Positions 1,979-59,262 are shown, numbered from the stretch's first letter. The stretch: DNA of 64,000 nucleotides from Octopus sinensis (GCF_006345805.1 NC_043001.1:13950001-14014000), one strand, 5' to 3'. Numbers and translations: made by a program. The notes: generated by a model not told the origin, from the sequence alone.

Positions 1979-2040
1979 AAGGCGGCGAGCTGGCAGAAAC
2001 GTGAACACGCCGGGCGAAATGCGTAGCCGTATTTCGTCTG
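1979..2040 (+). mobile_element. SINE family 1 (tRNA-like head, Nin/Deu-like core), 5' part of a copy split by the Tx1 LINE
   Basis: GGCGGCGAGCTGGCAGAAACG head; continues at 7366; outer TSD TATGATTCTG(C/T)CAT at 1965-1978 and 7550-7563. Confidence 0.85.
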
Positions 2041-2207
2041 TCGCACATGTGTTCGTGAAGTACGAATTGCTGTTTCGTGGTGTTAATATTGTTAACAACT
2101 GTTGTTTCTTGTTAAACTGTTGAATAACTTAACTGTTGGAGTTTTCAATTGAAAACACTTAGTGCTTGTGGTAGCACGCGTTGTTCATTCCCCCTTTGGG
2201 GGGAAGA

Positions 2208-3359
2208 ATGTCGTCTAGCATGGAGCCTACCGTTGGAGCAGAAATACTTGTTTCTCCTGTTGAGAGGAGGAAATACATGTCCGGCGAGGAGCCAACTACA
2301 GACAAGGAAATAGGGGTTTCCCCCGCTACAAGAAGGAATAGCAGAGAGGATAATATATTTGATATTTTTGGAGATGTGTCTGAGAGCTCGTCAGAACTTT
2401 CACCAGAAGAGTTTCCGACTTTGCCAGAGAACAAAGGCATTGTGTCGAAGAGAATAATTGATGTGCCTAGCATCCAGATAGAACCAAAAAATGGAAAAAA
2501 AAGTTTTGCGTTGGCTGCTGGGGGTGGAACCCAGATACTGTCGACGAATAAAAGCGAAATTATGAAATACAGCAAAATGATGGAAATAACTGACAACGGT
2601 GTGAAAATTGAACCTCCGCAAAAGTTAATACAGGAAGAAAAGCAAAAAACAATAATTTTCAAAACATATTGTCTACAAAAACGAAAAATTGAAAGAATGT
2701 CAGAAGAGAAAATAGAAAAGTGCTTAAAGCCAATATTGGGCGACGTAGTATTTCTGAGAAGAGGAAAAAAATTCGGAACGGTGGAAGTAAGGTTCACCAA
2801 TAAAGAAATAGCACACAAGAACTCAGTTGAAACGTTGAAAACGAACGACGTGGAGTTAATCCCCTATTATATGGGGATGAGGACGTCGCGAATAAAAATT
2901 ACAAGGGTCCCGCCAGAGGTCGAACCTATGTGGTTGTTGGCGGCAGTCCTAATCAAAGAGGTAGAAAAAATTACTCTCCTCCAGGCTACCGCTACGGAAA
3001 ACCCACGCTGGGATGGTCAAACAATTAATCTTCTCATTCAAGCGGACCCTAAAATAATTCAAACAATTCCTGAGACAATTGAGGTAGGGGAGGAGAACCT
3101 CGTGGTGTTTGTTGAGGGCCGAAAACCTCGATGTTTTTTATGTGGTCAATTAGGCCACATTCGAAGGAACTGCAAGGAAAATGAAGAAGAAGAGGAAGAG
3201 GAGCAAAAAGACAAAGAGGAAGAAGATAAAGAAGAAACAGATGAGAAAAAACAACAAACAAAAGAAAAATACAACCAGCAACCCAGCCGAGAGCGGCGAC
3301 TACTACAGAACAACGACCAAAAAAGACTGCCAGAAGAGAAAAAGAAGAAAAAGGCATAA
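2208..3359 (+). CDS. Tx1-like ORF1 (gag-like nucleic-acid-binding protein); probably continues to 3731 through frameshifts in A runs
   Basis: ATG at 2208; RRM-like FGTVEVRF segment; zinc knuckle CFLCGQLGHIRRNC; acidic/basic low-complexity tail. Confidence 0.8.
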   Translation: MSSSMEPTVGAEILVSPVERRKYMSGEEPTTDKEIGVSPATRRNSREDNIFDIFGDVSESSSELSPEEFPTLPENKGIVSKRIIDVPSIQIEPKNGKKSFALAAGGGTQILSTNKSEIMKYSKMMEITDNGVKIEPPQKLIQEEKQKTIIFKTYCLQKRKIERMSEEKIEKCLKPILGDVVFLRRGKKFGTVEVRFTNKEIAHKNSVETLKTNDVELIPYYMGMRTSRIKITRVPPEVEPMWLLAAVLIKEVEKITLLQATATENPRWDGQTINLLIQADPKIIQTIPETIEVGEENLVVFVEGRKPRCFLCGQLGHIRRNCKENEEEEEEEQKDKEEEDKEETDEKKQQTKEKYNQQPSRERRLLQNNDQKRLPEEKKKKKA

Positions 3360-3746
3360 TAGCCGTATACACTAAAGATACTGAGCTCATGAGAGACATT
3401 CAACTCATAAAGACTGTAAAAAATTGATAACCTTTCAGAGGAATTTATCAATTACGACATATATGAAGTCTCAAATAAGACTTATAGAATTCTACAAAAT
3501 AAGTACAGAAAGACTGTATCTTCATTGAGATTAGATTTTAACAAGTCGATATTTCATGGATTACCAGCTCCGATCCCGCGAGAAAAGGAAAAGGTGGAGA
3601 TTCCCCCTCCACCTGATAATTCTGTGTCGGTGGTGAGACGGGATTTTGACAAATCTATTTCCCAAGACCGTCCACCTCCGACCCTGGATCAAAAAAAAGG
3701 TGGAGGGTCCCCCGCCACCGGACAATCCTAATTAAACAGGTAAGTG

Positions 3747-6700
3747 ATGGCTATTCACATTGGTTGTTTAAATGTTCATGGCCTGTTGTCAAGCTGGAAG
3801 CAAGGACGCTTTCTGAATGACATCAGGTCGAGAAATTTGGATGTAATTGTTGCAACGGAAACCCGGGTGAAGGGCAAGAGATCTGCTCCCCCTCCTGAAC
3901 GGCTACGAGAAATACGTTTCTCCGAGTCGGGCGGGAGGTGGGGGTGGGTGTTGGTCCTACTAAAAAGAAACCGGGTAGCCGAGAAAAAGTTGGTTTTTTC
4001 TGACCCAGAAGGCAGGCTGGTCGTTCTCGACTTGACATTCAGTTGTGGCAAGACAATCAGGCTGGTCGCTATTTACGCACCAAACATTATTGGCCCGCAA
4101 ACTGAATATTTTCGTGGCCTAGGAAAGTTCCTAGCCACGTCGCATTCACTAGTAGTGTTAGGAGACTCTAATACAATATGTGCAGCACACACAGATTGTG
4201 TTGGCTGAAACTCGAACATGAACAGAAAATGTAACCAGGCTTTCGGGATCTGCTAAGTCAATTTCAGCTAGCAGATCCATATAGGTTGGAGCACCCGAAC
4301 ACTCCACAGTGGACGTGGTCAAATAGTGACGGGTCTACCAGAACATATCTAGATAGGATTTTAATTAGAGAAAAAGATAAGTCCATAGTTGAGTGTCCAC
4401 AGTTTTTTCTAGTCAGCTACAGTGACCACAAGATGGTTACCTGTAAACTGACGGTAGATAAGTTGCATAGACAGGGATCTGGCTACTGGAAACTCAATAC
4501 GTCCCTTTTGGCGATTGAGGAGTACAGAAAGCGGATCAAGATGTTAATACAGAGGGCATTAACAGTACCATCATTAATAACAAATGGTGGTACGCCCTAA
4601 AAAGAGCCATCAAATATGAGTCTATTAGGTTTAGCATAAGTTTAGCTAAGAAGGGACGTAAAATAGGAGATGGTCTAGTTAAGGAACTAGAAGAAGCCTG
4701 GAGGACTGGTAATACAGACCAAGCGAGGGTGAAAAGACTGGAGTTAAACCAGCATCTTGAAGCCCACCACATGGGAAGTATTACCAGAGCTAAGTTACGT
4801 GCAATGGGAAGTGAAGGAATCAAAGCCGCTGGATGGGCCCGAGTGGTGGAAGCTCGGCAAGGAAATAGCTCCTCTATTCGGTCTTTGACGAATCAAAATG
4901 GTGTCTTGATAAACGAACCCGAGAAAATGTGTGAGGTCTTTCGGGAGTACTTCGCCCAGCTATTCGGGGGTGACGGCGGTCCTGGTGGTGGGAGAGCCCT
5001 CGAGGACTTTCTTACCGGGCTGCCGTGCCTCTCAGGGTCGGATGCGGAGTCTTGCGAATGGCCAATCACACCTGAGGAGGTGATGGAGGCGTTGGCCGTG
5101 TGTAAAGCGGGTAAGTCACCGGGACTTGATGGTCTTCCGTACGAGCTGTATAAATGTATGCCAGACTTGTTCGGGCAACTACTGACTGACGTGTACGCGA
5201 ACTGGAAACAGAATGGGTTTATCCCCAGATCTGTGCGCCGGGGGTAGTGACGTTGGTCAGAAAGGACCCGGACAAGGGGGACGTTCTAGAGAATTTCAGG
5301 CCATCACTCTGTTAAACGCAGAAGTGAAGATTTTGGCCAAGGTTCTAGCAAAAAGGTTGGCGCGTGTCGCGAATGGTATAGTTGGTGAGGCACAGACATG
5401 TGCCATCCCAGGCAGAACCATTCAGGATACCCTCCATCTTATTCGCTATACCATAGAGAGGTTTGGTAATAAATCTGGCAAAGGTGGGGCATTGGTGCAT
5501 TTGGACCAGTCTAAAGCTTTTGATAGGGTTGACCATCGATACCTAGCGACTGTACTTGCGCGGTTTGGCCTGGGCCTTGGCTTCCTCAGGTGGTTTATCG
5601 CTTTGTACCACAACATTGACTCGATAGTTCGGAGCCGTTCTGCATCAGACGCTCGGTTCGTCAAGGATGTCCGCTTTCACCACTTTTGTATGTGATGGCT
5701 CTCGAGCCATTACTGCAAAGGTTGAGTGGCATCCCGAGAGAACCAGGACTAGAGGAGTTTGTTACGGCTTTCGCGGATGATATCACTATCAGTGTAACCA
5801 CAGTGGCACGCCTACGTGAAGTAGGTAAGACTATTGAGGCTTACGAGGAGGTAGCAGGAGCAAAGATTAACCGGGAAAAGTCGGTCGGCTTGCAGCTCGG
5901 CACCTGGGTTGGCAAGTCGATGCCTTCAGACAGTGTTGTTAGGCGCTGGACGGAGGGACCGGTTAAGTTGCTGGGAGTCTGGTTTGGACCAGGCCTCCAG
6001 ATAGAGAAGAACTGGACGGAGGTATTGAGCAGGGTGGCTGCAGTAGTCAAGACCTGGTCTTGGCGGTGGCTATCCCTGAAAGAGAGGGCGGAGGTGGCCA
6101 ATGTGTTTATCGCATCGGTCATTACCTACCGCCTGACCGTCGTGCCCTGTCCGGATTCGTGGTTGATCAGGTTGGAGAGACAGCTCTTTCGCTTTTTGTG
6201 GAAGGGCAGGTCGCCACTTGTGAAACGCTCTGTCTGCTGTCAAAAGCCTTTAAATGGAGGTTTAGGGATGCCTTGGTTAATGATGCGCAGACATGCGTTG
6301 CGGTTGAGGCACCTCTGGATTCTCCTGGATAGTGAACGGGTGTGGTCTCCGCTGGCCAGACAAATGTTCCCTGAGTTCAAGAGTTTTTGCGAACAGGAAG
6401 CCTGGTGTTCTCGTAGACCGAGGTCGAGTGAGTGGCATAAAGAGTGCCGTAAGGCCCTCTTGCTGTTCCGGCGCTCGGGCAACGCCAGCGGTGGGGGTTC
6501 CACACGGATTTTATATAGTGGGTTGGTAGAGTCTGAATGCGACGATGGCCTGGGGTCGACTCTAGGTCTCGGATTTATTCAACTGGACAGCTTGTTTCAT
6601 CGTACATTCGGGTTGAGAACGTTGGACAACTTCCAAAAGTCCTTAACCTGGCAATGCTGCAGAGGTGCCTTGCCGGTTTGGGATAAGCTCGCAAGACATG

Positions 6701-7115
6701 GTAAACGTCAGTCGCCGACCTGTCCAAGATGCGAGGGGGACAGGGAAACCGTCCCTCACGCTATTGTTCAGTGTCCGGAGATAACTGAAATGTGGGCTTA
6801 TGCTGAACATCTGTTGTCCGGCGAAGGAAGAGTACGGCTGTCGACTGAGTCAATTATAAAAATTGACCCACCGGGAGTTCTAACGAACGAAGGTAAGAAT
6901 TGTTTTCTCACTGTTGTAGCAATAGCAAAAGAGGCTGTATGGAATACTAGGATAAAAGGAATTAAGACTTTATCTCTGGTGACAATTTACGATCCTTTTT
7001 TTCTTTTCATTTGAAAAGGAAACTGTGGCTGGAGAAGAGGTGTCTGTCAGAGTGTACGTTCCAAAAGAGATGGAAGTATGTTGCACGAGTGTTTTGCGTG
7101 CAAGGAACCGTGTGA
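3747..7115 (+). pseudogene. Tx1-like ORF2 (APE endonuclease - RT - CCHC), frameshifted
   Basis: IGCLNVHGL, ATETRV, AIYAPN, LGDSN, LDRILI, SDH; KSPGLDG, ITLLNAEVKILAK, LDQSKAFDRVDH, RQGCPLSP (shifted frame), FADDI, LLGV; CPRCEGDRETVPHAIVQC; likely stop TGA 7113-7115. Confidence 0.9.
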
Positions 7116-7365
7116 ATAGACGAGGGAAAAAAAAAAAAAGAGGAAAAATAAAAAGGTATCAGCGGTAGATCGGGGCTTGTGGGATTGGAGCGTAACTTGA
7201 TCATCGCTTCATTTGTATTGTTTTTGTACTGTGTATTCCATTCGATTTTTATGTATTGTATTTTATTTTTGATGTCACATTTATGTAAAATCATATCGAT
7301 TCACTGATCCCATCAGTTGTACTGTCCATATCTATGTTTGGCCCCCGGTGGGCAATAAAGAAATT

Positions 7366-7549
7366 CGTATTTCGTCTGCCGTTACGTTCTGGGTTCAAAT
7401 TCCGCCGAGGTCGATTTAGCCTTTCATCCTTTCAGGATCGATAAATTATGTACCAGTTACGCACTGGGGTCGATATAATCGACTTAATACCTATGTCTGT
7501 CCTTGTTTGTTCCCTCTGTGTTTAGCCCCTTGTGGGTAGTAAAGAAATA
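7366..7549 (+). mobile_element. SINE family 1, 3' part of the split copy (tail A)
   Basis: B-box GGTTCAAATTCC, core GCCTTTCATCCTTTC..GATCGATAAATTATGTACCAG, tail GCCCCTTGTGGGTAGTAAAGAAAT. Confidence 0.85.
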
Positions 7550-7949
7550 TATGATTCTGTCATGTCTTTATATATTGTGGTTATCAATCTGTAATACATT
7601 CGCTTGCTATGAAAAAAAATATTTTCCACCACTTAAAGCTTAGCCAAGTCTTTCGTCTCCCTTTCCGTAGTTATCTGCATTTGCTCTCTGAATGAGTTCG
7701 ATCACATTTTACTTCATAAAATTTGTTCCAAAAACATTATTTCTGGGAAATGTTTCAGCGACCATCACTCTCCTTTCGTCATAAATTCCAATGCCAATAA
7801 TTATCTATCCTAAGTATTTCACAACAATTTTTTTTTAAATTCACATTTTTTCCATGTGTAATTGTAGTCAAAATTCTCTCTTCTCTGAAACTACTGACAA
7901 ATATTTCATCTGCTCTTGACTCTTTCACCTCGCCACTAATATATTTATT

Positions 7950-8180
7950 TCTTTACTACCCACAAGGGGCTAAACATAGAGAGGACAAACAAGGACAGAC
8001 AAAGGGATTAAGTCGATTATATCGACTACAGTGCATAACTGGTACTTATTTAATCGACCCCGAAAGGATGAAAGGCAAAGTCGACCTCGGCGGAATTTGA
8101 AATCAGAACGTAGCGACAGACGAAATATTGCTTAGCATTTCGCCCGGCGTGCTAACGATTCTACCAGCTCGCCGCCACTA
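7950..8180 (-). mobile_element. SINE family 1 (tail A)
   Basis: Full head-core-tail; flanking duplication CGCCACTAATATATTT. Confidence 0.85.
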
Positions 8181-8695: not shown

Positions 8696-8925
8696 GGCGG
8701 CGAGTTGGTAGAATCGTTAGCACACCGGGCGAAATGCGCGGCCGTATTTCGTCTGCCGCTACGTTCTGGGTTCAAATTCCGCCGAGGTCGACTTTGCCTT
8801 TCATCCTTTCGGGTTCGATAAATTAAGTACCAGTTACGCACTGGGGTCGATGTAATCGACTTAATCCGTTTGTCTGTCCTTGTTTGTCCCCTCTATGTTT
8901 AGCCCCTTGTGGGCAATAAAGAAAT
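8696..8925 (+). mobile_element. SINE family 1 (tail A)
   Basis: 24-bp TSD ATATATTTCATCTTTAATTTCTTA at 8672-8695 and 8926-8949. Confidence 0.9.
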
Positions 8926-10112
8926 ATATATTTCATCTTTAATTTCTTACCAGTTCAGAATTCATATGAAGTTATAAAAAGCAAATGCAGTTTTGAGAAC
9001 ATTTTGTACAATTTCCAAGGAGTTGTGATATAATCTCTGCATTTATTGTGGTCCTTCTATGAAAGCTGTGGGCACGGCTGTTACTTTTTACCAATATTCA
9101 CTATATAAGAGTCCATGGAATCCTAAATTGCTTCGTAATATATATCTCTATCGTTTTGTTTATTAGAAACTACGCACTAGAATCTAGCTTCCTCAATTTC
9201 AGAATACGTATCGTAATTAATATTCTTGAGCTAAATGACTTCACAATTGGAGATAATTAAAATAATTTGAAAGCATTATCAGCCTCTATTTGTAGTAATT
9301 AACTTCTATAATTTATTGAGATTTTTCCCCCCGCAACATCAGATGACAAATTAACTGGTATCTTTCCCCAAATGGAAATAGTAATTAAAATTGTAGCAGT
9401 TCATAAAATGGTTAAACAGAAGGGATTATTTGAAGTAAAGGTTCCCTTGCAACGCCTCTTTTACACAGCCTAATTAGTCGTTCCAAGTGTTGGGTTTCCA
9501 AATTAGTACATGGCATAATTACTGCAAATTACTCGCAAGTAGACTGTTTACATGTTTGGATACCAAATCTAAAAACCTGTTTGTCAGCAGCATCCATTGG
9601 AAATTAATTGAGCATTAAGAGAATCTAAGTTTTATTTACTATTATCTTGAAATAAAGCAGCGAATCAAATTCACTATCTCTTAGCCTCATTGTCTGATGA
9701 TGCCCCAGGATATCTCTGTCGATTGTGTTGTGTATTCGCATCGTCCAATTCATTTGTTTCAGCAAACCCTGTTTATAATTTTAAGGAGTAAATTCATTTG
9801 GAAGCTAATTGATTGAAGAACTGGCCATGCATTTTATGCATGTACACACAGATTTTACTTAAACTATTCGTTTTACTGTTTATCAAATCTGTTATAAACC
9901 GTAATGTTAGATCTAAGACCGACATCTTTTACATTAGTTAAAAGTTCTTTCCACGCTGAAGATGGAACAGGAATTGATGATGGTGCCACCTGTACCTTAT
10001 CATAGCATCAACTCAATTTATGACTTTTGTAATTATTTGAAATTCTTTCTCACATTCATAATTTTCTTACAATTTACAACTGCTTATAGCATATGTTTTT
10101 GTTTGTTATATA

Positions 10113-10725: not shown

Positions 10726-12254
10726 TTTAACCAATTTCAGTGTACTTGAGAAGCCGATATGTTATGACACACGTAGAAACGCATACATAAGAAAATGCTG
10801 AAACTAAGTTTGAAAACAAAATATATAAAAAAGATCTAAATGCTTTTATCATTAAATTGTTTTTAGATTCTAAGTTATTCCTTCGAAATCAACGACACTT
10901 CTAAGCTTGGCAGCCTTTCTAAAACCAGTATAAAAATTTCCCTCCCCACCTCTCTCTCCCACACTCTCTTCCCCACCCCCATACTAGCCTTTTTTGCATT
11001 TGGTTTTTTGCACCAAGAACAAAGCAACAATATTGTCTCATTCACATTCGCTTTTAGCCCTGCATTGCATTAAATGGGTTTATCACATTTAATGCAACGA
11101 TAAGGAAGTTGACAGCAACATCGAACTCTAGTTATTTATCGCATTTCTAATGCAATATGGATGGGTTGTAATACCATAAGGTTTCTAAATAATCTTTACA
11201 AGGGTATAGAGGTGTTTGCACATGACCTAATCATAAGGCATAGTTTAAAGGATCATGGCCAGTTCGAAAACAACAAAGCCTTCGTTACCGTAGCTCAGTA
11301 TGTAATACGTTGATAGAGCAAGCTGAGATAACGAAGGATTAAAGATTGATGGTTTATCTCTTGATTCCCTCGCCCCTAACCCTTTTTCTATTCTACTTAA
11401 AATAATCTCCGAAGGCTTCTCTACACATATTCCCAGTAGCAGTCATGCTCAATGAGCTTTTTGTATTTCCCAAGTGACTTTTTTTACTTCTATTTTCCGC
11501 CTGTTTCTTGTCACGGAGATATTTGATTTATAGTTTCACGACTGCTTTCATTAAACATTCTTTCATTATCATCGTGTTTTTGTAATAACCGGAATTCGTA
11601 AGATAGGCTGTCTTGGTTGCTTCTGTTCGATACAACACATCCATTCAGCGTTTGACGTTTGTTATTCATCTTAACCCGCACAGAAATTGCCACCGAACTT
11701 ACTTAGTGTGAAAAAAAATGATATATCGAAACCTGGAAAGCTATAGAGAAACTTCGTTTAATAGAAAGTAAGAGCGAAACAGATATAAGTTGCTTATTAT
11801 AATTATATATGTAAAAAAAACAAATGTCTCTATATATCTTTATGAATAGCTGTCTTCCAATCTGTCGCCGGTAGCTTCTACTGCATTGTAAATACGGTAT
11901 TGTGAACTGAAGTGAAATAAATATTGAACATAAATAATGAGCCTAAGATTAATTGTGTATTAGCGAAAGATATAAAACATGTCCTGGGTTTCTTTCGCTT
12001 TAGTTGTAAAACATAACTGAAATACATATTGAATAAAAAATCTAAAAGAAAAGTTAAAGTTTATAGTGAGAATTTGGTAGCACAAAAGAAAGAGGAGACT
12101 AAACAGACGAAGTGTAATCGTGCTTAGGTATTGAAATGTATGGCACGTCCTACATTCAGATGGAGACGACGAAGAAGCAGACAAACTATAATGGATAAAA
12201 GAGGTTAGAAACAAATATATGTAGTAGTAGTAGTAGTAGTAGTAGTTTTAAGTT

Positions 12255-12440
12255 TTGGCACAAGGCCAGCAATGTCGAGCAAATAAGTAAGTCGATTACA
12301 TCGGCCTCAGTGCAAAAGTGGTCCACTTATTTCATCCTTGCCGTCCCCGGCGGAATTTGAGCTCCGAACGTAAAATCGCAAGATATGCCTACAAATATTT
12401 TGCCCGGCGAGCTAACGATCCTGCCAGCTCACCGCCTTAA
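12255..12440 (-). mobile_element. SINE family 1, old copy with alternative tail (GGCCTTGTGCCAAAA)
   Basis: Head AGGCGGTGAGCTGGCAG, B-box and core recognisable. Confidence 0.7.
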
Positions 12441-12484
12441 TAATAATAATTATTATCATTATTATTATTATTATCATTGTTATT

Positions 12485-12548: not shown

Positions 12549-13775
12549 ACGTCACACAGTATACAATATTGTGAGGTTGTTGATTGAAGGGTTTACACTG
12601 TTTGTCAAGTCACAATAATTTACGCAATATACGTGCAGTTCCAAGTAATGCCAGCTTTTGCAATACATCTGGATCGTACGGTATCTCTAAAGTTTTCAGA
12701 TATTTTTTTTTTTCAGATTGGGTGCTACTGAACTGAATGCTCCGATAACAATAGGAACAACGTTTAGGTTCGACTCTCGTAGCTGCCACATCTTAGCGAC
12801 CTCAGTTCTCAGGTCTCCGTATTTATCAAATTTTTCTCTCTCTTTTATGATGATGTGTTGATCTCCTGGCACTGCTACATCGATTACTAGGGACTCTTCT
12901 TTGTCCCTCCTACAAGTTATTATGTCCGGCCTTTGGGGCTCCAACACCTTGTCTGTCTGGAAATCAAAGTCCCAGAAGATTTTTGCCTTCCCTTTTTCGT
13001 CCATTAGCTTTTCCGGTGTATGTTGGTACCAAGCACCCACAACCTCATATCCATACTTACGGCATAGTAGCCAGTGGAGGTTTTCGTGTCTATGCTTGAG
13101 TGGCTGTGTGGTAAGTAGCTTGTTTACCAACCACATGGTTCTGGGTTCAGTCCCACTGCGTGGCACCTTGGGCAAGTGTCTTCGACTATAGGCTCAGGCC
13201 GACCAAAGCCTTGTGAGTGGATTTGGTAGACGAAAACTGAAAGAAGCCCGTCGTATATATGTATATATATGCGTGTGTGTGTTTGTGTGTCTGTGTTTGT
13301 CCTCCTAGCATTGATTGACAACCGATGCTGGTGTGTTTATGTCCCCGTTACTTAGTGGTTCGGCAAAAGAGACCGATAGAATAAGTACTGGGCTTACAAA
13401 AGAATAAGTCATGGGGTCGATTTGGTCGACTAAAGGCGGTGCTCCAGCATGGCCGCAGTCAAATGATTGAAACAAGTAAAAGAGAGTAAGACTTTCAAAA
13501 GCTCTAACAATGTGAGTCGCACTTTTGAACCTCTCCCCACACATTCCGCAGAGGTCCGATGCACTTGTGTGGTATATATTCTTTTTCACTGAGTTTGTAT
13601 TCAATGCCTGGTATTCAAGGCCGCGATGATTAGGATTTTAGTATTCTTTTGTAGGCCACCCTTGTGGAGCCACCTCAATGATGCTTCCTTGTCTTTTAAT
13701 TTGTTGGTTTCACGGTGGAACTGACCATGTAATTCCATACGGAGTAGGATTTCTTCTCTCTCGCTGGCTGTTGTT
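12549..13775 (-). mobile_element. R4/Dong-clade LINE 3' fragment (CCHC plus restriction-like endonuclease)
   Basis: LHGQF, CGMCGERFKSATHIV, LHWLLC, WDFDFQTDK..RPDII, VIDVAVP, KEREKFDKY, VPIVIGA, LQKLALLGTARILRK; bounded by (TAA)n at 12438-12548 and about 13785-13815. Confidence 0.85.
13098..13490 (+). mobile_element. SINE family 2 (tRNA head, CORE-like TGGGCAAGTG, internal microsatellite, CR1-like tail) inserted in the Dong fragment
   Basis: GAGTGGCTGTGTGGTAAGTAGCTTG...GGCGGTGCTCCAGCATGGCCGCAGTCAAATGATTGAAACAAGTAAAAGAG. Confidence 0.85.
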
Positions 13776-13814
13776 GTTGTTCTTATTATTATTATTATTA
13801 TTATCATCATTATT

Positions 13815-14167
13815 ATTTCAAATTGTTGCCACAAGGGCAGCTTGGGAGATTACATTGACCCCAGAGTTCAATTGGTACTTATTTTATCGAACCCGAAAGA
13901 ATGAATGGCGGAATTCGAACTCAGAACGTTAAGACAGACGAAATACCTATTTTTTTACTACTCACAAGGGGCTAAAGACAGATGGGACAAACAAGGACAG
14001 ACAAACGGATGAAGTCGATTATATCGACCCCAGTGCGTAACTGGTACTTATTTAATCGATCCCGAAAGGATGGAAAGCAAGGTCGACCTCGGCAGAACGT
14101 AGCAGCAGACGAAATACAACTACGCGTTTCGCCCGGCGTGCTAACGTTTCTGTCAGCTCGCGGCCTT
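13815..14167 (-). mobile_element. SINE family 1 composite (tail-A unit joined to a second unit at the GTATTTCGTCTG site)
   Basis: Junction at 13935-13950. Confidence 0.8.
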
Positions 14168-14380
14168 AATAACTATTAAATGCAATAACTAACTAGAATT
14201 CGATGTTGCTGTCCACTTTCTTATCGTTGCATTAAATGTGATAAACCTATTTAATGCAATGCAGAGCAAGAAGAGAATGTGAATGAGACAATATTTTTGA
14301 TTTGATCTTGGTGCAAAAAACCAGATTGACTCTACTGCATGCCCTGGCTCTGTCGATGGACAAAATACTGTCACAAATGT

Positions 14381-14732
14381 GCTTAGCGGTATTTCATCTG
14401 TCGCTACGTTCTGAGTTCAAATTCCGCCGAAGTCGACTTTGCCTTTCATCCTTTCGGGGTAGATTAAATAAGTACCAGTTACGCACTGGGCTCGATATAA
14501 TCGACTCCGTTTGTTTGTCTTTGTTTATCCTCTCTGTGTTTAGCCTCTTGTGGGTAGTAAAGAAATAGGTATTTCATCTGTCTTTACATTCTGAGTTCAA
14601 ACTCCACCGAGATCGACTTTGCCTTTCATCCTTTCGGGGTCGATAAATTAAGTACCAGTTGCGAACTGGGGTCGATCTAATCGACTGGTCTCCTCCCCAT
14701 AAATTTCGGACCTGATGCCTAGAGTAGAAAAG
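14381..14732 (+). mobile_element. SINE family 1 composite (tail A then tail B)
   Basis: Junction ...AAAGAAATAG|GTATTTCATCTG at 14569; 17-bp TSD AATACTGTCACAAATGT at 14364-14380 and 14733-14749. Confidence 0.85.
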
Positions 14733-14974
14733 AATACTGTCACAAATGTCAGGCAGAACATCTTTTAAAATACCCTTAGAGACTTTCTCTCTATCTCTCT
14801 CCCTCTCTATATATATATATCTATCTCTCTATCTCTATCCTCTCTATCTATCCTTCTCTCTATCTATCTATCTATCGCTCTCCCCACTCTCTGTGAAACA
14901 TGTCTCGACCTCATCCTTGCCTCAGACAATAAGACAAATCCGGCGATAAAATATTTTTCTGTTAAATTTTTCTT

Positions 14975-15610: not shown

Positions 15611-16159
15611 ACTTATCTTCATTACTGAGTCTCGTTTTTATAAGATTTATTTCTTTGTCTTTTTATGATGTATTTTTTTTTTTATCTTTGGATATGACAT
15701 TCATAAAGAATTCGGTGCAGACATTTTCTTTTTTCTTTCTTCGTTTCCATCATCGGTATCGTTGTTTCTCTTGTTGTTGACGTGGTTCATTCTGCTATTG
15801 TTAAAAGACGCCATTATTTTCTCTATTAATAAAACACAAAAATACCTCACTTTTGCAATCTGAAAAAGGCGATTTCGTTTGCAAGATTTTGGTTAATTCC
15901 TTTTTCTTTGCGTATTTGTCTGTGTTCAGCTGTGCAGCTGTCAATACTTTTGTTTGTTTGGAAGCGATTCTTGCAGATATTTTATACTGGATATCAGTTA
16001 ATACAGATATATTTCAAAAACATCCTTACTTTCGTTTAACCTTCTGCAAAACAATCAGCTCTAAACAGCTTACATTATTCAATTCTGGAAACTGTTCAAA
16101 AAAAGTAATCCACGAACAAGAGTGTTGGTGAGTATGTCGTTCCACAGTATATTCTATAG

Positions 16160-16205
<46 letters not shown>

Positions 16206-16471
16206 TAATTTATTGACCGCAAGGGTTGCAAGAATGTCATTCAGGAAAATACGGAGACAAATGACAGTAAGGATTTATATAAAAACATGTAAAAAAAAAA
16301 TAATAAACAGTTACAACAAAAACGTTCAAATCCCCTCTCTCTCTCTCTCTATCTCCCTCTGCACCCTCATTTTCCAGTTTTAGTAGCTAGCTATCAAAAT
16401 GTGACCTCGTGTGTACCGTTGGCGATTTTTTTTCTTCTGCCTTCCCTTCTCTGGATCTTTCCTTCTCCTAT

Positions 16472-16506: not shown

Positions 16507-17090
16507 CCTCCTTCTTTCTTTCCTTTCCTGAACGTCCAATAATACTATATTTGTTCCACGTCCTCGTGTTATTGTGGTTTTTTTTGTGCTTTCTTGTTTG
16601 GATTAACTTTATCTACCAAGAAGCCTGCAAATAAATCTTGTATGGGAAGATAAAGCTTGTAGAGCAGATCATCCAGCCCCGGAAACCACTCCCTCGTGTA
16701 ATTTCTTCATGTGTTTCGTAAGCTCTTGTCGAGATTTTGTAGAACTTTGCGTCCGTATTCGTCAGGTGCAATACGCCATCGACGTTGGTGGTAAAGTTCA
16801 CTCCCGTCTTCGCTTCACTATCTGCCCCCCAAATACCTGCGCGAAGAGCCACCAGGAAGCCGTACACATCTACTTGGAATCGAGTAACCCTCTCAAAATA
16901 TTAAGGGTCGAATTGTAGCTCTCTCGTCAAGTAGTGCCTCAGCCACATGGCTCACCGAACGGCACTCATTCTCTAATTCCTTAGAGCAAGCACCTTACAT
17001 ATGACTACTACTGGGTAGTAGCAGATAAAGAGAATAGAAGGTGCCAGATGATTGACTTTACAGTCCAAAAAAAAAATCAATATAATCAAT

Positions 17091-17506
17091 AGGCGCAGGA
17101 GTGGCTGTGTGGTAAGTAGCTTGCTAACCAACCACATGGTTCCGGGTTCAGTCCCACTGCGTGGCATCTTGGGCAAGTGTCTTCTGCTATAGCCCCGGGC
17201 CGACCAATGCCTTGTGAGTGTAATTTAGTAGACGGAAACTGAAAGAAGCCCGTCGTATATATGTATATATATATATATATATATATAAGTGTGTATGTAT
17301 ATGTTTGTGTGTCTGTGTTTGTCCCCCTAGCATTGCTTGACAACCGATGCTGGTGTGTGTACGTCCCCGTCACATAGCGGTTCGGCAAAAGAGACCGATA
17401 GAATAAGTACTGGGCTTACAAAGAATAAGTCCCGGGGTCGATTTGGTCGACTAAAGGCGGTGCTCCAGCATGGCCGCAGTCAAATGACTGGAACAAGTAA
17501 AAGAGT
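17091..17506 (+). mobile_element. SINE family 2, full length
   Basis: Head, CORE-like box, (TA)n, tail hairpin CAGTC-AAAT-GACTG at 17477-17490. Confidence 0.9.
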
Positions 17507-17519
17507 ATAATAGGTATAT

Positions 17520-17828: not shown

Positions 17829-17959
17829 GGAGGAGGAAGACGGGCAAGCGGAGGAGGAGGATATATAGCGCTACTAAAAAGGCATTATCTCACGTTCTCG
17901 CTCACACTCTCCCTCACTCTTGCTCTTCTTCCCTTTCTCTTTCTCTTTTATTTTTCTCT

Positions 17960-18368
17960 TTTACTTGTTTCAGTCATTATACTGCGGCCATGCTGGAGCA
18001 TCGCCTTTAGTCGAGCAAATCGACCCCGGGACTTATTCTTTGTAAGCCCAGTACTTATTCTATCGGTCTCTTTTGCCGAACCGCTAAGTTACGGGGACAT
18101 AAACACACCAGCATCGGTTGTCAAGCAATGCTAGGGGGACAAACACAGACACACAAACATATACACACACACACATATATATATATACATATATACATAT
18201 ATACGACAGGCTTCTTTCAGTTTCCGTCTACCAAATCCACTCACAAGGTATTTGGTCGGCCCGGGGCTATAGCAGAAGACACTTGCCCAAGATGCCACGC
18301 AGTGGGACTGAACCCGGAACCATGTGTCTGGTTAGCAGGCTACTTACCACACAGCCACTCCTGCGCCT
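17960..18368 (-). mobile_element. SINE family 2, full length
   Basis: Same modules on the minus strand. Confidence 0.9.
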
Positions 18369-18644: not shown

Positions 18645-18730
18645 AATGTATATATGAGGGGGTATATATGCGTAACGTTTAAATATATATACATATGTAT
18701 ATATATGTATATATACATGCATATGTATAC

Positions 18731-18769
<39 letters not shown>

Positions 18770-25839: not shown

Positions 25840-26094
25840 TATATATATATATATATATTATATAGATATATATATATATGTAAATATATATATTATATGT
25901 AAATATATATATATATGTAAATATATATATATATGTATAATATATATATGTATATATATATAATGTTATATATATATATAGGTAAATATATATATATATT
26001 GTAAATATATATATGTAAATATATATATATATGTATATAATATATATGTATATATATATGTATGTATATATATATGTATGTATATATATATATG

Positions 26095-26125
<31 letters not shown>

Positions 26126-26193
26126 GTAATATATATATATATGTAAATATATATATATATGTAAATATATATATATATGTATATATATATATG

Positions 26194-26226
<33 letters not shown>

Positions 26227-33344: not shown

Positions 33345-33870
33345 TTGTTTCTAATTTTGGCACAAGGTGATCAATTTCTAAGGAATATGTGCCAATCAGC
33401 ATTCGATTGGCACTTATTTTATAGACCCCGGAGAAATGAAAGGTAAAGTCGAGCTCGGTTGAAATTGAACTTAAAATATAAAGACGCACGAAATGACGCT
33501 AAGCTTTTTGTCGGCGCGGTAACGATTCTGCCAGCTCGCTGTTTCACCAACACACTACATAATCCTTTCTACAAATGGCAAAAAGCCTGAAATGTGTGGG
33601 GAGTGATCTGGTCGATAACATCAACCCCCAGAGTTTCACTGATATTTAATTTATCGACCCCGAAAGAATGAAAAACAAAGTTGACCTCGGTGGAATTTGA
33701 ACTCAGAACGTAGCGGCAGCCGAAATACCTATTTCTATACTACCCACAAGGGGCTAAACACAGAGAGGACAAACAAGGACAGACAAACGGATTAAGTCGA
33801 TTATATCGACCCCAGTGCGTGACTGGTACTTATTTAATCGACACCGAAAGGCAGACGAGATACCGCTAAC
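33345..33870 (-). mobile_element. Two adjacent SINE family 1 units; the second is a tail-A composite
   Basis: Target junction at 33717-33732. Confidence 0.75.
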
Positions 33871-34594
33871 GTTTCTCCCATTGCCACCATATAAATTCTC
33901 TATAGAATTTAGGGAAAAAACTAAAAGAACCAGACATTAGTATCGATTGACGATACTGACAAAGATGTATCTCAGTCAGGGCCGAGGATCCTTAATGAAT
34001 CGAGTCCATCTTGCCAGTGGTTTAAGAGCTTTGAATGATTTTAATACAAACGTGCTGGTATAATTTTAAGGACCAGCGGTAGCCAGATAATCTGAGATGT
34101 GAAAGACATACTACTGGCTGAGTGAATAACGTGACGCGATCGTCACGTGCCTGCAACATGTTACTGGAAGAAGTAGATATATAAGAGTAGCTATATATAA
34201 ATAGAGCAATCACACTATCCATTTTCCGATCACACGATGAGCTTGGAATGTATGTATAAATGAAATCTTTACCTTTTCTACTATACACTACAATTGTATA
34301 TTTTTTCCCAACACAATTTCGCTACAGAAAACCACGATATACAATGGAAATTGTTTCCTTTACACACACACACACATTTAAATGTATCTGTGCATATGTA
34401 GAATACATACTAATGCACATACATAAGTGTTAATATCTACATTTCTTCATAGGCATATACATACATGTACAGAACAATGAAATACATGCAAGGCTACCTA
34501 TAAAAGAACGTGCATTAGAATATACACATGCACGTGTGGGTATATTTGTATAGAATCTTTATTTACCTGTCCACATGCATTTGTGTATGCGTGC

Positions 34595-41042: not shown

Positions 41043-41258
41043 CTATTTCTTTATTACCCACAAGGGGCTAAACATAGAGGGGACAAACAAGGACAGATAT
41101 AGGTATTAAGTCGATTACATCAACCCCAGTGCGTAACTGGTACTTAATTTATCGACCTCGAAAGGATGAAAGGCAAAGTCGACCTCGGCGGAATTTGAAC
41201 TCAGAACGTAACAGCAGACGAAATACGGCTACGCTAACGATTCTGCCGGCTCGCCACC
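41043..41258 (-). mobile_element. SINE family 1 (tail A)
   Basis: Head-core-tail A; short flanking duplication GGTTTCAG on the minus strand. Confidence 0.85.
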
Positions 41259-48085: not shown

Positions 48086-48972
48086 TAATCACGAGCTGGT
48101 CTCTGTCTTGTTTAAGGGAATTTCTATGATTCTGGGGACGCAGTGAAGTTTTCTAGCACTCGAACAAAATACGAAAACTGTTATTAATTATCTGCTTTCC
48201 TTTGATGCGGAACCATCACAGATGGATATCTATAGATATAAAGCTGAAGTTGTCTGTGTATGGTAGGTTTAGTAGCCTTCAACTAACACTATCTCCTCCG
48301 AGACCCTGCGGCGCAAGTTGACCACAATTGAGACTATGATAGAAAAAGGCTTTCTCTTCCTTCCGTAGAAGAAAAAATTCAGATCGAACCATGGTAACAC
48401 CAAAAATTATTTACATCAAAAAGCTGTCTACGTATCGTACTTAAGTTATACACACTGTCGACCAGCCACTGCAGTATTTTTCTTAAAATAACATTTCTTC
48501 TGACTTTAGTTAAAAGTATAATTCATATTGGAGAAAAAGAGAAAAATAATTCATCCCAGCAGCGGCCAACGAGAGCGCCAGAATTTCGACCTTTAGGTTT
48601 CTTTAGTGGCGTATATTCTATCAACCACATTCCTAGCTGAGAATTCACCGTCTCCGATATACGAAAACAATAATAAAAAATTCGCTCACGTTGCGAATAG
48701 CTGTCCAACTGCTTAAAAATCCAACTGCCCCGATTGCCTGTACTGTATCTAGTGCGATCGATATTAGCTGTTCAGTCAGTATTGAAATTTTATTGCAGTC
48801 CATTGCAGGAAATTACTCTCATCATGTAAACTTAATTGGCTGTCATTACTTCCTAACACAGTCTGACTATTTTTCCTGCATTGAAAATTCTTCTTTCTAT
48901 CACTAACCAAACCAACCACTTATTTTCATAAATATTTGAGAATGAAAATAGTGAGTTTTTAAGCACTCATTC

Positions 48973-49364
48973 TTTTCTACTCAAGAAACAAGGCCCGAAA
49001 TTGGGGGGACGGAGACCAGTCGATTAGATCGACCCCAGTACGCAACTGGTACTAAATTTATCGACCCTCAAAAGGATGAAAGGCAAAGTCGACCTCCGCG
49101 GAATTTGAACTTAGAATGTAGCGGCAGACGAAATACCTATTTCTTTACACAAGGGACTAAACACAGAGAGGACAAACAAGGACAGACAAACGGGGTAAGT
49201 CGATTACACCGACCCCAGTGCGTAACTGGTACTTAATTTATCGACCCCGAAGGGTGAAAGGCAAAGTCGACCTCGGCGGAATTTGAACTCAGAACGTAAC
49301 GGTAAACGAAATACGGCTACGCATTTCGCCCGGCGTGCTAACGATTCTGCCAGCTCGTCGCCTA
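48973..49364 (-). mobile_element. SINE family 1 composite (tail A then tail B)
   Basis: Junction at 49125-49140. Confidence 0.85.
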
Positions 49365-57088: not shown

Positions 57089-57321
57089 GGGCGGCGAGCT
57101 GGCAGAAACGTTAGCACGCCGGGCGAAATGCTTTGCGGTATTTCGTCTGTCGTTACGTTGTGAGTTCAAATTCCGCCGAGGTCCACTTTGCCTTTCATCC
57201 TTTCGGGGTCGATAAATTATGTACCAGTTACGCACTGGGGTCGATGTAATCGACTTAATCCATTTGTCTGTCCTTGTTTGTTCCCTCTATGTTTAGCCCC
57301 TTGTGGGTAGTAAAGAAATAG
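57089..57321 (+). mobile_element. SINE family 1 (tail A), founder of the adjacent array
   Basis: Full head-core-tail; TSD-like GGTAT(G/A)GTAA at 57073-57082 and 59262-59271. Confidence 0.9.
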
Positions 57322-59262
57322 GTATTTCGTCTGCCGTTATGTTACACACTAGGACCAATGTAATCGACTTAATCCCTTTGTCTGTCCTTGTTATTCTCTT
57401 CTATGTTTAGCCCCTTGTGGGTAATAAAGAAATAGGTATTTCGTCTGCCGTTATGTTACGCACTAGGACCAATGTAATCGACTTGATCCCTTTGTCTGTC
57501 CTTGTTATTCTCTTCTATGTTTAGCCCCTTGTGGGTAGTAAAGAAATAGGTATTTCGTCTGCCGTTATGTTACGCACTAGGACCAATGTAATCGACTTAA
57601 TCCCTTTGTCTGTCCTTGTTATTCTCTTCTATGTTTAGCCCCTTGTGGGTAGTAAAGAAATAGGTATTTCGTCTGCCGTTATGTTACGCACTAGGACCAA
57701 TGTAATCGACTTAATCCCTTTGTCTGTCCTTGTTATTCTCTTCTGTGTTTAGCCCCTTGTGGGAAATAAAGAAATAGGTATTTCGTCTGCCGTTATTTAC
57801 GCACTAGGACCAATGTAATCGACTTAATCCCTTTGTCTGTCCTTGTTATTCTCTTCTATGTTTAGCCCCTTGTGGGTAATAAAGAAATAGGTATTTCGTC
57901 TGCCGTATGTTACGCACTAGGACCAATGTAATCGACTTAATCCCTTGTCTGTCCTTGTTTGTTCCCTCTATGTTTAGCCCCTTGTGGGTAGTAAAGAAAT
58001 AGGTATTTCGTCTGCCGTTATGTTACGCACTAGGACCAATGTAATCGACTTAATCCCTTTGTCTGTCCTTGTTATTCTCTTCTATGTTTAGCCCCTTGTG
58101 GGTAATAAAGAAATAGGTATTTCGTCTGCCGTTATGTTACGCACTAGGACCAATGTAATCGACTTAATCCCTTTGTCTGTCCTTGTTATTCTCTTCTATG
58201 TTTAGCCCCTTGTGGGTAATAAAGAAATAGGTATTTCGTCTGCCGTTATGTTACGCACTAGGACCAATGTATCGACTTAATCCCTTTGTCTGTCCTTGTT
58301 ATTCTCTTCTATGTTTAGCCCCTTGTGGGTATAAAGAAATAGGTATTTCGTCTGCCGTTATGTTACGCACTAGGACCAATGTAATCGACTTAATCCCTTT
58401 GTCTGTCCTTGTTATTCTCTTCTATGTTTAGCCCCTTGTGGGAAATAAAGAAATAGGTATTCGTCTGCCGTTATGTTACGCACTAGGACCAATGTAATCG
58501 ACTTAATCCCTTTGTCTGTCCTTGTTATTCTCTTCTATGTTTAGCCCCTTGTGGGTAATAAAGAAATAGGTATTTCGTCTGCCGTTATGTTACGCACTAG
58601 GACCAATGTAATCGACTTAATCCCTTTGTCTGTCCTTGTTATTCTCTTCTATGTTTAGCCCCTTGTGGGTAATAAAGAAATAGGTATTTCGTCTGCCGTT
58701 ATGTTACGCACTAGGACCAATGTAATCGACTTAATCCCTTTGTCTGTCCTTGTTATTCTCTTCTATGTTTAGCCCCTTGTGGGTAATAAAGAAATAGGTA
58801 TTTCGTCTGCCGTTATGTTACGCACTAGGACCAATGTAATCGACTTAATCCCTTTGTCTGTCCTTGTTATTCTCTTCTATGTTTAGCCCCTTGTGGGTAA
58901 TAAAGAAATAGGTATTTCGTCTGCCGTTATGTTACGCACTAGGACCAATGTAATCGACTTAATCCCTTTGTCTGTCCTTGTTATTCTCTTCTATTCTCTT
59001 CTATGTTTAGCCCCTTGTGGGTAATAAAGAATAGGTATTTCGTCTGCCGTTATGTTACGCACTAGGACCAATGTAATCGACTTAATCCCTTTGTCTGTCC
59101 TTGTTATTCTCTTCTATGTTTAGCCCCTTGTGGGTAATAAAGAAATAGGTATTTCGTCTGCCGTTATGTTACGCACTAGGACCAATGTAATCGACTTAAT
59201 CCCTTTGTCTGTCCTTGTTATTCTCTTCTGTGTTTAGCCCCTTGTGGGTAATAAAGAAATAG
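57322..59262 (+). repeat. SINE-derived tandem array, 17 units of about 114 bp
   Basis: Unit starts 57322, 57436, 57550, 57664, 57778, 57891, 58003, 58117, 58231, 58343, 58457, 58570, 58684, 58798, 58912, 59035, 59149. Confidence 0.95.

What the first reader, a model, noticed from the sequence alone, without database searches (positions are those of the whole stretch)
13935..14580. SINE-in-SINE junctions at the identical nucleotide, five times in 64 kb
Seen: tail A (...AAAGAAATA) is followed immediately by GGTATTTC(G/A)(T/G)CTG and then another SINE body at 13935-13950 (-), 14560-14580 (+), 33717-33732 (-), 49125-49140 (-) and 57312-57333 (+). This is the same register as the Tx1 3' junction at 7366. 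The upstream unit always has tail A; in the four dispersed composites the downstream unit has a different tail (B or C). Inference: tail-A SINEs inherit the Tx1 site specificity and insert into their own family, so each new copy creates a new target. Alternative: one ancestral dimer spread as a unit.
Basis: partly seen in the sequence, partly recalled or inferred. Interest (0 to 1): 0.8.

Follow-up and report, generated by a model that had tools for sequence, protein, structure and literature searches.

The report
LINE/SINE pair that targets SINE heads
A jumping-gene pair (an L1/Tx1-like LINE and the short SINE that borrows its tail) repeatedly lands at one exact nucleotide inside the head of other SINE copies; this builds head-to-tail SINE dimers and seeds a 114-bp satellite, and is a new example of a known behaviour rather than a new mechanism.

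Summary
Tail A (..AAAGAAATA) abuts GGTATTTC(G/A)(T/G)CTG at five independent places and 16 more times inside a 114-bp tandem array; 0.03 matches are expected by chance.

GGTATTTCGTCTG is an internal site, about 50 nt into a roughly 230-bp SINE. A dead 5.3-kb L1/Tx1-like LINE (2044-7366) has a 3' end homologous to tail A. It sits at the same site inside a tail-A SINE and is flanked by a 15-bp target-site duplication, GTATTTCGTCTGYCG.

Evidence for independent insertions into older SINEs, not copies of one master dimer:
- One composite (33.7 kb) shows old head + duplicated site + 5'-truncated tail-A unit + duplicated site.
- The tail-A halves belong to two subfamilies and the downstream halves carry three tail types.
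- The tail-A halves keep more CpGs (34/37 vs 27/43).
- Tails B and C never show the junction (0/7, against 5/9 plus the LINE).

The specificity is a strong preference, not absolute. Four tail-A SINEs lie in unique DNA at look-alike sites (Monte Carlo P=0.0015).

The closest precedent is Tx1-Mar/SINEU in crocodilians. The new feature is that the target lies in the SINE's own head. Tx1 clade membership was not tested by phylogeny, and all counts come from one 64-kb window.

The parts
2044..7366 (+). Dead L1/Tx1-like LINE. ORF1 is at 2181-3359 with a CCHC knuckle. ORF2 fragments at 3744-7014 carry APE endonuclease, RT and a C-terminal zinc knuckle, broken by at least 4 frameshifts or stops. The 3' end is ..TATGTTTGGCCCCCGGTGGGCAATAAAGAAAT.
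   Evidence: ORFs; Pfam zf-CCHC, RVT_1 and zf-RVT; human L1 ORF2p E=9e-56 over EN+RT; frame breaks; 3' end aligns with tail A over about 75 nt.
1981..2043 (+). Head of host tail-A SINE 'E1' (consensus 3-65). It ends in the upstream copy of the LINE's target-site duplication, GTATTTCGTCTGTCG (2029-2043).
7367..7549 (+). Rest of host SINE E1 (consensus 51-233, tail A). It begins with the downstream copy of the duplication, GTATTTCGTCTGCCG (7367-7381). E1 has its own TSD, TATGATTCTGYCAT, at 1965-1978 and 7550-7563.
13948..14165 (-). Composite 1, upstream full-length tail-A unit (E5a).
13800..13947 (-). Composite 1, downstream unit (E5b). It starts at consensus 50 and has a B-like tail ending in (AAT)n.
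14381..14567 (+). Composite 2, upstream tail-A unit (E6a), starting at consensus 42. Its copy of the site carries the rare CATCTGTC variant.
14568..14732 (+). Composite 2, downstream unit (E6b), tail C, with the same rare CATCTGTC variant. The whole composite is flanked by the 17-bp TSD AATACTGTCACAAATGT (14364-14380 and 14733-14749).
33850..33888 (-). Composite 3, old SINE head (with an internal 29-49 deletion) plus the upstream copy of the duplicated site, GGTATCTCGTCTGCC.
33730..33849 (-). Composite 3, 5'-truncated tail-A unit (E7a, from consensus about 110). It is joined directly to the end of the duplicated site.
33558..33729 (-). Composite 3, downstream unit (E7b). It starts with the second copy of the site, GGTATTTCGGCTGCC, and has a C-like tail.
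49138..49362 (-). Composite 4, upstream full-length tail-A unit (E9a). It belongs to a different A subfamily from E5a/E6a/E7a.
48967..49137 (-). Composite 4, downstream unit (E9b), starting at consensus 50, tail C.
57090..57320 (+). Full-length tail-A SINE (E10) heading the tandem array.
57321..59261 (+). Tandem array of 114 bp x about 17. Each monomer is consensus 50-70 plus 144-233 (an internally deleted tail-A unit), so every monomer boundary is the same junction. E10 plus the array is flanked by GGTATGGTAA (57073-57082) and GGTATAGTAA (59262-59271).
7946..8176 (-). Standalone tail-A SINE (E2). Its TSD is (A)AATATATTAGTGGCG.
8696..8926 (+). Standalone tail-A SINE (E3). Its 23-bp TSD TATATTTCATCTTTAATTTCTTA (8673-8695 and 8927-8949) matches the SINE site at 9 of 13 positions in the same register.
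41044..41258 (-). Standalone tail-A SINE (E8). Its TSD starts GGTTTCAG.

Best explanation
An L1-superfamily (probably Tx1-type) LINE, and the SINE subfamily that carries a copy of its last ~75 nt ('tail A'), insert by target-primed reverse transcription. They strongly prefer the word (G)GTATTTCGTCTG. That word lies about 50 nt into the Pol III-type head shared by several SINE families of this genome, between the A-box-like and B-box-like motifs.

Proposed steps:
1. The bottom strand is nicked opposite the position just 5' of GGTATTTC.
2. The top strand is nicked about 15 nt downstream. This duplicates GGTATTTCGTCTGYC(G).
3. When the incoming element is a LINE, both copies of the site and both halves of the host SINE remain visible.
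4. When it is a SINE, its cDNA is homologous to the host head. The 5' junction is then resolved either at the duplicated site (composites at 14.4 and 33.8 kb) or further upstream by homology (13.9 and 49.2 kb).
5. The product looks like one complete tail-A unit followed by a host unit that starts exactly at GGTATTTC.

Every full-length insert brings a fresh copy of the site, so targets are renewed. One such junction has been amplified into a 114-bp satellite, probably by unequal exchange.

Shown: the junctions, the TSDs, the tail homology and the contrasts between halves. Inferred: the nick positions, the homology-mediated 5' resolution, and whether the preference comes from the endonuclease.
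For: 1. The LINE 2044-7366 splits a tail-A SINE at this site, with GTATTTCGTCTGTCG (2029-2043) and GTATTTCGTCTGCCG (7367-7381) on either side. The host SINE has its own separate TSD.
2. Composite 3 reads old head, then GGTATCTCGTCTGCC, then a tail-A unit truncated at about consensus 110, then GGTATTTCGGCTGCC. This is a classic 5'-truncated insertion with a 15-bp TSD.
3. Both site copies in composite 2 share the rare CATCTGTC variant, and the composite as a whole has a 17-bp TSD.
4. The LINE 3' end and tail A align over about 75 nt (85% over the last 34 nt).
5. The halves are unlinked. E5a/E6a/E7a carry GATTAAATAAGT..GATATA and E9a carries GATAAATTAAGT..GGTGTA, yet E6b and E9b share tail C. Three downstream tail types occur.
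6. CpG retention in the shared region is 34/37 for tail-A halves and 27/43 for downstream halves, P=0.002.
7. The junction follows tail A at 5/9 ends plus the LINE at 1/1, and follows other tails at 0/7.
8. Even if any TATTTC hexamer were an equal target, 6 of 11 hits in about 18 SINE sites among 109 hexamers gives P=0.004.
9. The five non-SINE targets match GGTATTTCGTCTG in register at 28/65 positions (Monte Carlo P=0.0015). T occurs at position 3 in 5/5, and one target matches 9/13.
10. In Argonauta hians the homologous LINE/SINE tail (..TTGTGGCTAATAGAGAAATC) is followed by TAT(T/A)T in most of about 26 cases. Two clear TSDs there begin TATTT/TATAT.
11. Precedent: Tx1-Mar LINEs and SINEU SINEs share a target in a Mariner transposon (PMC4494074).
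Against: - The sample is one 64-kb window: 9 tail-A SINE ends, 1 LINE and 1 array.
- No empty-site orthologue was seen.
- In composites 1 and 4 the head next to the site is of the type seen in standalone tail-A units (GCGTAGCCG), not the GG type implied by the downstream unit. The old head is therefore not visibly retained, and homology-mediated replacement has to be assumed.
- Composite 4 has no recognisable TSD.
- No double-head product (old head + site + full-length new SINE) is present in the window.
- No tail-C unit with its own head occurs in the window, so retro-copying of an A-C read-through dimer cannot be excluded for composite 2.
- Some CpG 'losses' in downstream units may be family-specific differences rather than decay.
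- The primer left by the proposed nick (..GAAATACC-3') is not complementary to the RNA end ..GAAAUA-3', so how priming works is unexplained.
Confidence: 0.72

Rival explanations
1. Dimer master. One or a few A-X dimers arose once and spread as units. For example, a read-through Pol III transcript of the upstream unit could be mobilised through the downstream unit's tail.
For: Tail A has no T4 terminator, so read-through into the downstream unit is plausible (sequence). Composite 2 is a 5'-truncated dimer flanked by a single 17-bp TSD. Both tail-C units in the window sit in composites.
Against: - The downstream halves carry three different tail types.
- The A halves of the two A-C composites differ at multi-nucleotide subfamily markers, while their C halves agree.
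- The A halves retain more CpGs than their partners.
- It does not explain the LINE at the same site with a TSD, nor composite 3's duplicated site.
- It could still account for individual copies such as composite 2.
Confidence: 0.1
2. Template switching. While copying a B/C-tailed SINE RNA, the reverse transcriptase stops at consensus position 50 and jumps to the 3' end of a tail-A RNA. The cause could be a modified base, an RNA 5' end made by processing, or the head hairpin. This would make chimeric cDNAs without any DNA site preference.
For: End-to-end template jumping by non-LTR reverse transcriptases is established (general knowledge of R2). The site lies in the 3' arm of a 13-bp hairpin in the head. 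Composites with a single outer TSD are compatible with it.
Against: - It cannot produce SINE head + 15-bp repeat + LINE + 15-bp repeat + SINE body, nor composite 3.
- It would require the B/C partner enzyme to pick tail-A RNAs specifically.
- It does not explain why tail-A SINEs in unique DNA sit at look-alike sites.
- A hairpin block would be expected at the base of the stem (about position 60), not at 50.
Confidence: 0.06
3. The insertion model is the same, but the preference comes from RNA-DNA pairing and not from the endonuclease. Source copies sitting in GGTATTTC sites would give read-through RNAs ending ..AAAGAAAUAGGUAUUU. These would pair with the nicked target strand ..GAAATACC-3', as R1/R2-type elements use co-transcribed target sequence.
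For: Tail A lacks a Pol III terminator, and the first T-run downstream in SINE sites is the TATTTC of the target itself. All non-SINE targets share T at position 3 and TAT/TTT-rich starts. The tail end GAAATA is the reverse complement of TATTTC, so the mature tail alone cannot pair with the primer. Kojima 2015 discusses co-transcription strengthening target specificity.
Against: There are no RNA data. Junctions in unique DNA (..GAAATA|TATGATT, |AATATATT) lack the GG expected if GGUAUUU were copied. The fixed nick register 2 nt upstream of TATTTC is equally well explained by endonuclease recognition.
Confidence: 0.25

Closest known systems
Tx1-Mar LINEs and SINEU SINEs of crocodilians (Kojima 2015, PMC4494074)
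   Same: A Tx1-type LINE and its non-autonomous SINE partners insert preferentially at fixed positions of one interspersed repeat family. The shared target is used there to infer the LINE-SINE partnership. Copies flanked by other copies at the target are reported.
   Different: There the target is an unrelated Mariner DNA transposon, and the SINE heads derive from U1/U2. Here the target lies inside the head of the SINE superfamily itself. Insertions therefore regenerate targets and create head-to-tail SINE dimers, and the LINE-SINE tail homology is direct (about 75 nt).
Tx1L in Tx1D (Xenopus), and Keno, Kibi and Koshi (Tx1 clade, sequence-specific; cited in PMC4494074)
   Same: An APE-type LINE inserts at one defined sequence of a multicopy host sequence and leaves target-site duplications.
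   Different: Clade membership of the present LINE was not tested by phylogeny. Its specificity is incomplete, since 4 of 9 partner SINEs lie outside the target repeat.
Alu insertions into A-rich regions of older Alus through the L1 endonuclease's TT|AAAA preference (general knowledge, not tested here)
   Same: SINE-in-SINE clustering results from the partner LINE's nick-site preference meeting a matching word inside the SINE.
   Different: The L1 preference is a short, loose, A/T-rich word, so the junctions are spread out. Here the junction is one nucleotide position within a word of 12 nt or more.
SINE multimers and SINE-derived satellites (Dip/B1 multimers in jerboa; sSat in squamates; Vassetzky et al. 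2023, PMC10702118)
   Same: Arrays are built from SINE segments, with a complete SINE at one end. Insertion into the same locus and unequal recombination are proposed as origins.
   Different: Here the monomer boundary coincides with a demonstrable LINE/SINE insertion site. This gives a concrete seeding event for the array.

Membership tests
L1/Tx1-group non-LTR retrotransposon | ORF2 with an N-terminal APE-type endonuclease, an RT and a C-terminal Cys/His knuckle, plus ORF1 with a CCHC knuckle | tested here: met
   Pfam zf-CCHC in ORF1, and RVT_1 and zf-RVT in ORF2. The conceptual ORF2 aligns with human L1 ORF2p residues 10-889, E=9e-56, and with L1 endonuclease structures. The copy is broken by several frameshifts.
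Tx1 clade specifically | The RT domain groups with Tx1/Keno/Kibi rather than L1 in a phylogeny | not testable with these tools
   No reference Tx1 sequences were available. Homologue searches returned unnamed proteins. Indirect only: an O. vulgaris repeat annotation lists L1-Tx1 as the only L1-type class among recently active LINEs (PMC13282606).
Target-specific LINE (Kojima's working criterion) | More than 20% of copies are flanked by one kind of sequence at a fixed position | tested here: met
   LINE 1/1 and partner SINE 5/9 at the same nucleotide of the SINE head. The sample is small. The criterion is quoted from PMC4494074.
Target-specific LINE | The insertion is flanked by a duplication of the target, with both halves of the host retained | tested here: met
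   2029-2043 and 7367-7381 (14 of 15 identical) with SINE head 1981-2043 and body 7367-7549. Composite 3 shows the same.
LINE-dependent SINE (stringent type) | The SINE 3' tail is homologous to the partner LINE's 3' end | tested here: met
   Alignment of 7200-7366 with tail-A units. BLAST 7331-7364 against consensus 199-232 gives 85%.
tRNA-derived SINE | The head is recognisable as a tRNA, or carries Pol III A and B boxes | tested here: inconclusive
   ARAGORN gave 0 genes and Rfam gave 0 matches, even at E<=10 on one copy. A-box-like TGGCAGAATCG and B-box-like GAGTTCAAATTCC are seen by eye only.
Dimeric SINE family (Alu-like master dimer) | Both halves are inherited together, with linked diagnostic variants and a constant partner | tested here: not met
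   Three downstream tail types, A halves of two subfamilies, and different CpG decay in the two halves.
SINE-derived satellite | A head-to-tail array of a SINE segment | tested here: met
   57227-59266: period 114, 17.9 copies, 96% matches. The monomer maps to consensus 50-72 plus 140-233.

The most novel reading that the evidence does not exclude
A self-targeting retroelement pair. The preferred integration site lies between the A and B boxes of the SINE's own Pol III head. Each insertion would therefore disarm the old copy, install a new promoter-competent copy and regenerate the target. This would make a self-renewing 'safe harbour' made of SINEs. Read-through RNAs that end in the target word would supply the specificity by pairing, and reiterated copying at the regenerated junction would directly generate satellite arrays.
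Probability: 0.2. Interest if true: 0.7.

Novelty: new variant of a known kind. Interest (0 to 1): 0.45.

Why it matters
SINEs make up a tenth or more of octopod genomes (11.6% in O. vulgaris, PMC13282606).

- A LINE/SINE pair that lands in SINE heads would explain part of the SINE clustering.
- It would bias repeat annotation, because dimers get called as new families.
- It gives a built-in relative dating tool, since host units are older than guest units.
- It provides a concrete route from dispersed repeat to satellite.
- It offers a compact natural target (about 13-16 bp) for studying how an APE-type LINE achieves sequence preference.

It does not change the accepted picture of retrotransposition.

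Tried and rejected
- Public-collection scans. Tail A found 0 hits in metagenome and viral contigs. The SINE core found 0 hits in metagenome contigs. No same-genus DNA could be fetched, so a genome-wide tally was impossible.
- Short contigs encoding relatives of the LINE (L002-L005) end before the 3' junction.
- Homologue searches gave no source names that would place the LINE in Tx1 rather than L1.
- ARAGORN and Rfam did not recognise the SINE head.
- RNAalifold on tails from this genome and Argonauta gave no supported hairpin (-1.3 kcal/mol, no covariation). A structural recognition element in the tail is therefore not claimed.
- A literal sequence search of the literature found nothing relevant.
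- The idea that the downstream unit is the newcomer was rejected. It would need a 5' truncation at position 50 when inserting behind a tail-A unit. The outer TSD of composite 2 encloses both units, and the downstream units look older.
- The region 15940-16420 was read by mistake for an unrelated repeat and has no bearing on the finding.

Full report
**Observation.** AAAGAAATA is followed directly by GGTATTTC(G/A)(T/G)CTG at 13947/13948 (-), 14567/14568 (+), 33729/33730 (-), 49137/49138 (-) and 57320/57321 (+). There are 22 matches at up to 2 mismatches, against 0.03 expected.

**Anatomy of the SINE.** A full-length unit (57090-57320) is about 231 bp. It has a head starting GGCGGCGAGCTGGCAGAA.., a core, and tail A..CCCCTTGTGGGTAGTAAAGAAATA. 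BLAST of this unit against the window shows that GGTATTTC is an internal position, consensus 50 of the 233-nt reference. Every unit that follows a tail A starts exactly there.
- Tail-A units outside the array: nine in all. One is split by a LINE, three are standalone (7946-8176, 8696-8926, 41044-41258), four are the upstream halves of composites, and one heads the array.
- Downstream halves: they carry other tails (B-like, C, C-like).
- Full-length non-A SINEs: they occur at 12288-12436, 33375-33545 and 59300-59504.
- tRNA origin: ARAGORN and Rfam do not recognise the head, so 'tRNA-derived' rests only on A-box-like and B-box-like motifs seen by eye.

**The key new fact.** The element ending at 7366 is a 5.3-kb LINE (2044-7366).
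- ORF1 has a CCHC knuckle. ORF2 has APE, RT and zinc-knuckle fragments.
- Its conceptual ORF2 matches human L1 ORF2p across endonuclease and RT (E=9e-56).
- Its last ~75 nt align with tail A, so it is the likely partner of the tail-A SINEs.
- It is preceded by a SINE head (1981-2043) ending in GTATTTCGTCTGTCG. It is followed by GTATTTCGTCTGCCG and the rest of a tail-A SINE (7367-7549).
- That host SINE has its own TSD, TATGATTCTGYCAT (1965-1978 and 7550-7563).

The LINE therefore inserted into a SINE at the same nucleotide (within 1 nt) as the SINE-SINE junctions, and it duplicated 15 bp of the target. Neither a dimer master nor template switching predicts this.

**SINE-in-SINE events.**
- Composite 3 (33.7-33.9 kb, minus strand) reads: old head; GGTATCTCGTCTGCC; a tail-A unit starting only at consensus ~110; tail A; GGTATTTCGGCTGCC; the rest of the host. 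This is a 5'-truncated insertion bracketed by the same 15-bp duplication.
- Composite 2 (14381-14732) starts at consensus 42. It is enclosed by a 17-bp TSD, and both copies of the site share the rare CATCTGTC variant.
- In composites 1 and 4 the upstream unit looks complete, and its head is of the type seen in standalone tail-A units. I infer that the 5' end of the new cDNA was resolved by homology with the host head. Chimaeric L1 insertions behave this way (general knowledge). This step is inferred, not shown.

**Independence of events.**
- The A halves fall into two subfamilies: GATTAAATAAGT..GATATA in E5a/E6a/E7a, and GATAAATTAAGT..GGTGTA in E9a. The two tail-C partners (E6b, E9b) group together regardless. 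Three downstream tail types occur.
- At 11 consensus CpG sites of the shared region, the A halves retain 34/37 and their partners 27/43 (P=0.002). This fits young guests in older hosts. Some of the differences may be family-specific rather than decay.
- Tail A shows the junction at 5/9 ends (6/10 with the LINE). Other tails show it at 0/7 (P=0.029 and 0.017).

**Preference, not strict specificity.** Four tail-A SINEs and the outer end of the array lie in unique DNA.
- Their TSDs begin TATGATTCTG, AATATATTAG, TATATTTCATC, GGTTTCAG and GGTATAG.
- In register they match GGTATTTCGTCTG at 28/65 positions (Monte Carlo P=0.0015). T occurs at position 3 in 5/5, and one site matches 9/13.
- Six of 11 insertions hit about 18 SINE sites among 109 TATTTC hexamers outside the array (P=0.004). 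The recognised word is therefore longer than a hexamer.

**Support from a second genus.** The closest named protein relatives are from Argonauta hians (54% identity).
- In two Argonauta loci the homologous tail ..TTGTGGCTAATAGAGAAATC occurs about 26 times in 35 kb, and is mostly followed by TAT(T/A)T.
- Two clear TSDs there begin TATTT and TATAT.
- A head-to-tail SINE trimer with a constant junction is present.
- The tail and the T-A-T-rich target start are thus conserved, although the Argonauta SINE head is different.

**The array.** Each monomer is consensus 50-70 joined to 144-233 through the microhomology GTTACG. A full-length unit precedes the array, and unit plus array is flanked by GGTATGGTAA and GGTATAGTAA. 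All monomers share the same deletion. Monomer 6 is chimaeric with the leading unit's tail type, and TRF also reports a 453-bp higher-order period. Recombination has therefore shaped the array. I read the array as one insertion-type junction later amplified, not as 17 separate insertions. Reiterated copying during a single reverse transcription cannot be excluded.

**Mechanistic loose ends.** The site is the 3' arm of a 13-bp hairpin in the head. The tail end GAAATA is the reverse complement of TATTTC, so the nicked primer (..GAAATACC-3') cannot pair with the mature tail. Either priming needs no pairing, or read-through RNAs ending in GGUAUUU supply it; tail A has no T4 terminator. No conserved tail hairpin was supported.

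**Comparison with known systems.** Kojima (2015, PMC4494074) showed that crocodilian SINEU families share with Tx1-Mar LINEs a preference for fixed positions in a Mariner transposon. That paper lists Tx1L/Tx1D, Keno, Kibi and Koshi as sequence-specific Tx1 elements. SINE multimers and SINE-derived satellites are also documented (PMC10702118). The present case is the same kind of system. The difference is that the target lies in the SINE's own head, which makes targets self-renewing and produces dimers at single-nucleotide precision. I found no description of this pair in the searchable literature. Repbase, the public repeat-family reference library, could not be consulted.

**Limits.** All counts come from one 64-kb window. 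No same-genus sequence could be fetched. Tx1 clade membership is untested. The source species was not identified beyond 'octopod-like'.

**Verdict.** This is a new variant of a known kind, of moderate interest.

Noticed in passing
window 13098-13499, 17069-17507, 17948-18368, 39303-39701, 42332-42739, 52209-52649, 56324-56688, 62821-63263: An interspersed repeat of about 400 bp occurs at least 8 times (80-92% identity). It has an internal CA/TA-rich microsatellite and starts ..TTACTTGTTTCAGTCATTTGACTGCGGCCATGCTGGAGCACCGCC. Its family is not identified.
   Followed up: partly
window 50124-50530, 61734-62141, 62419-62826; also 47697-48078 and 63491-63865: Further dispersed repeats at 90-94% identity, seen in the accidental self-BLAST. 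Not characterised.
   Followed up: no
window 18683-19927, 25840-27375, 51381-51842, 55067-55552, 60533-61120, 53741-54178, 28197-28905: Long (TA)n/(ATAT)n tracts of up to 1.5 kb, an (ATAG)n tract, and a 64/128-bp AT-rich minisatellite.
   Followed up: no
window 7634-7668: A SINE-head-like relic, AAAGCTTAGCCAAGTCTTTCGTCTCCC, lies 85 nt downstream of the host SINE. It resembles the target region but is unoccupied. A second unoccupied look-alike, GTATTTCGTCTCC, lies at 28062-28076.
   Followed up: no
L006 4903-5356 (Argonauta hians BAAFZT010000007.1): A head-to-tail trimer of a 152-nt tRNA-like SINE carries the homologous tail. The junction is GAGAAATC|(C/T)ATT(T)|TGTCCRGCCGAC. Units 2 and 3 are 98-100% alike and unit 1 is of another subfamily. 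The phrase TATTTGTCCGGCCG resembles this window's target TATTTCGTCTGCCG.
   Followed up: partly
L001 8014-8650 (Argonauta hians BAAFZT010000001.1): Two copies of the LINE 3' UTR lie in tandem, separated by about 140 bp. This suggests nested or adjacent insertions of the LINE family in Argonauta as well.
   Followed up: no
window 12200-12480, 13760-13800, 59262-59300: SINEs with B-like tails end in (ATT)n/(TAC)n microsatellites, and three of them have the 5' flank ..ATTAA|GG. This points to a different partner LINE with its own AT-rich target preference.
   Followed up: no
window 8726-8755 (and every SINE head): The target word is the 3' arm of an imperfect 13-bp inverted repeat, CGGGCGAAATGCG/CGTATTTCGTCTG. 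After insertion the junction GAAATA-GG-TATTTC is again near-palindromic. The significance is unknown.
   Followed up: partly
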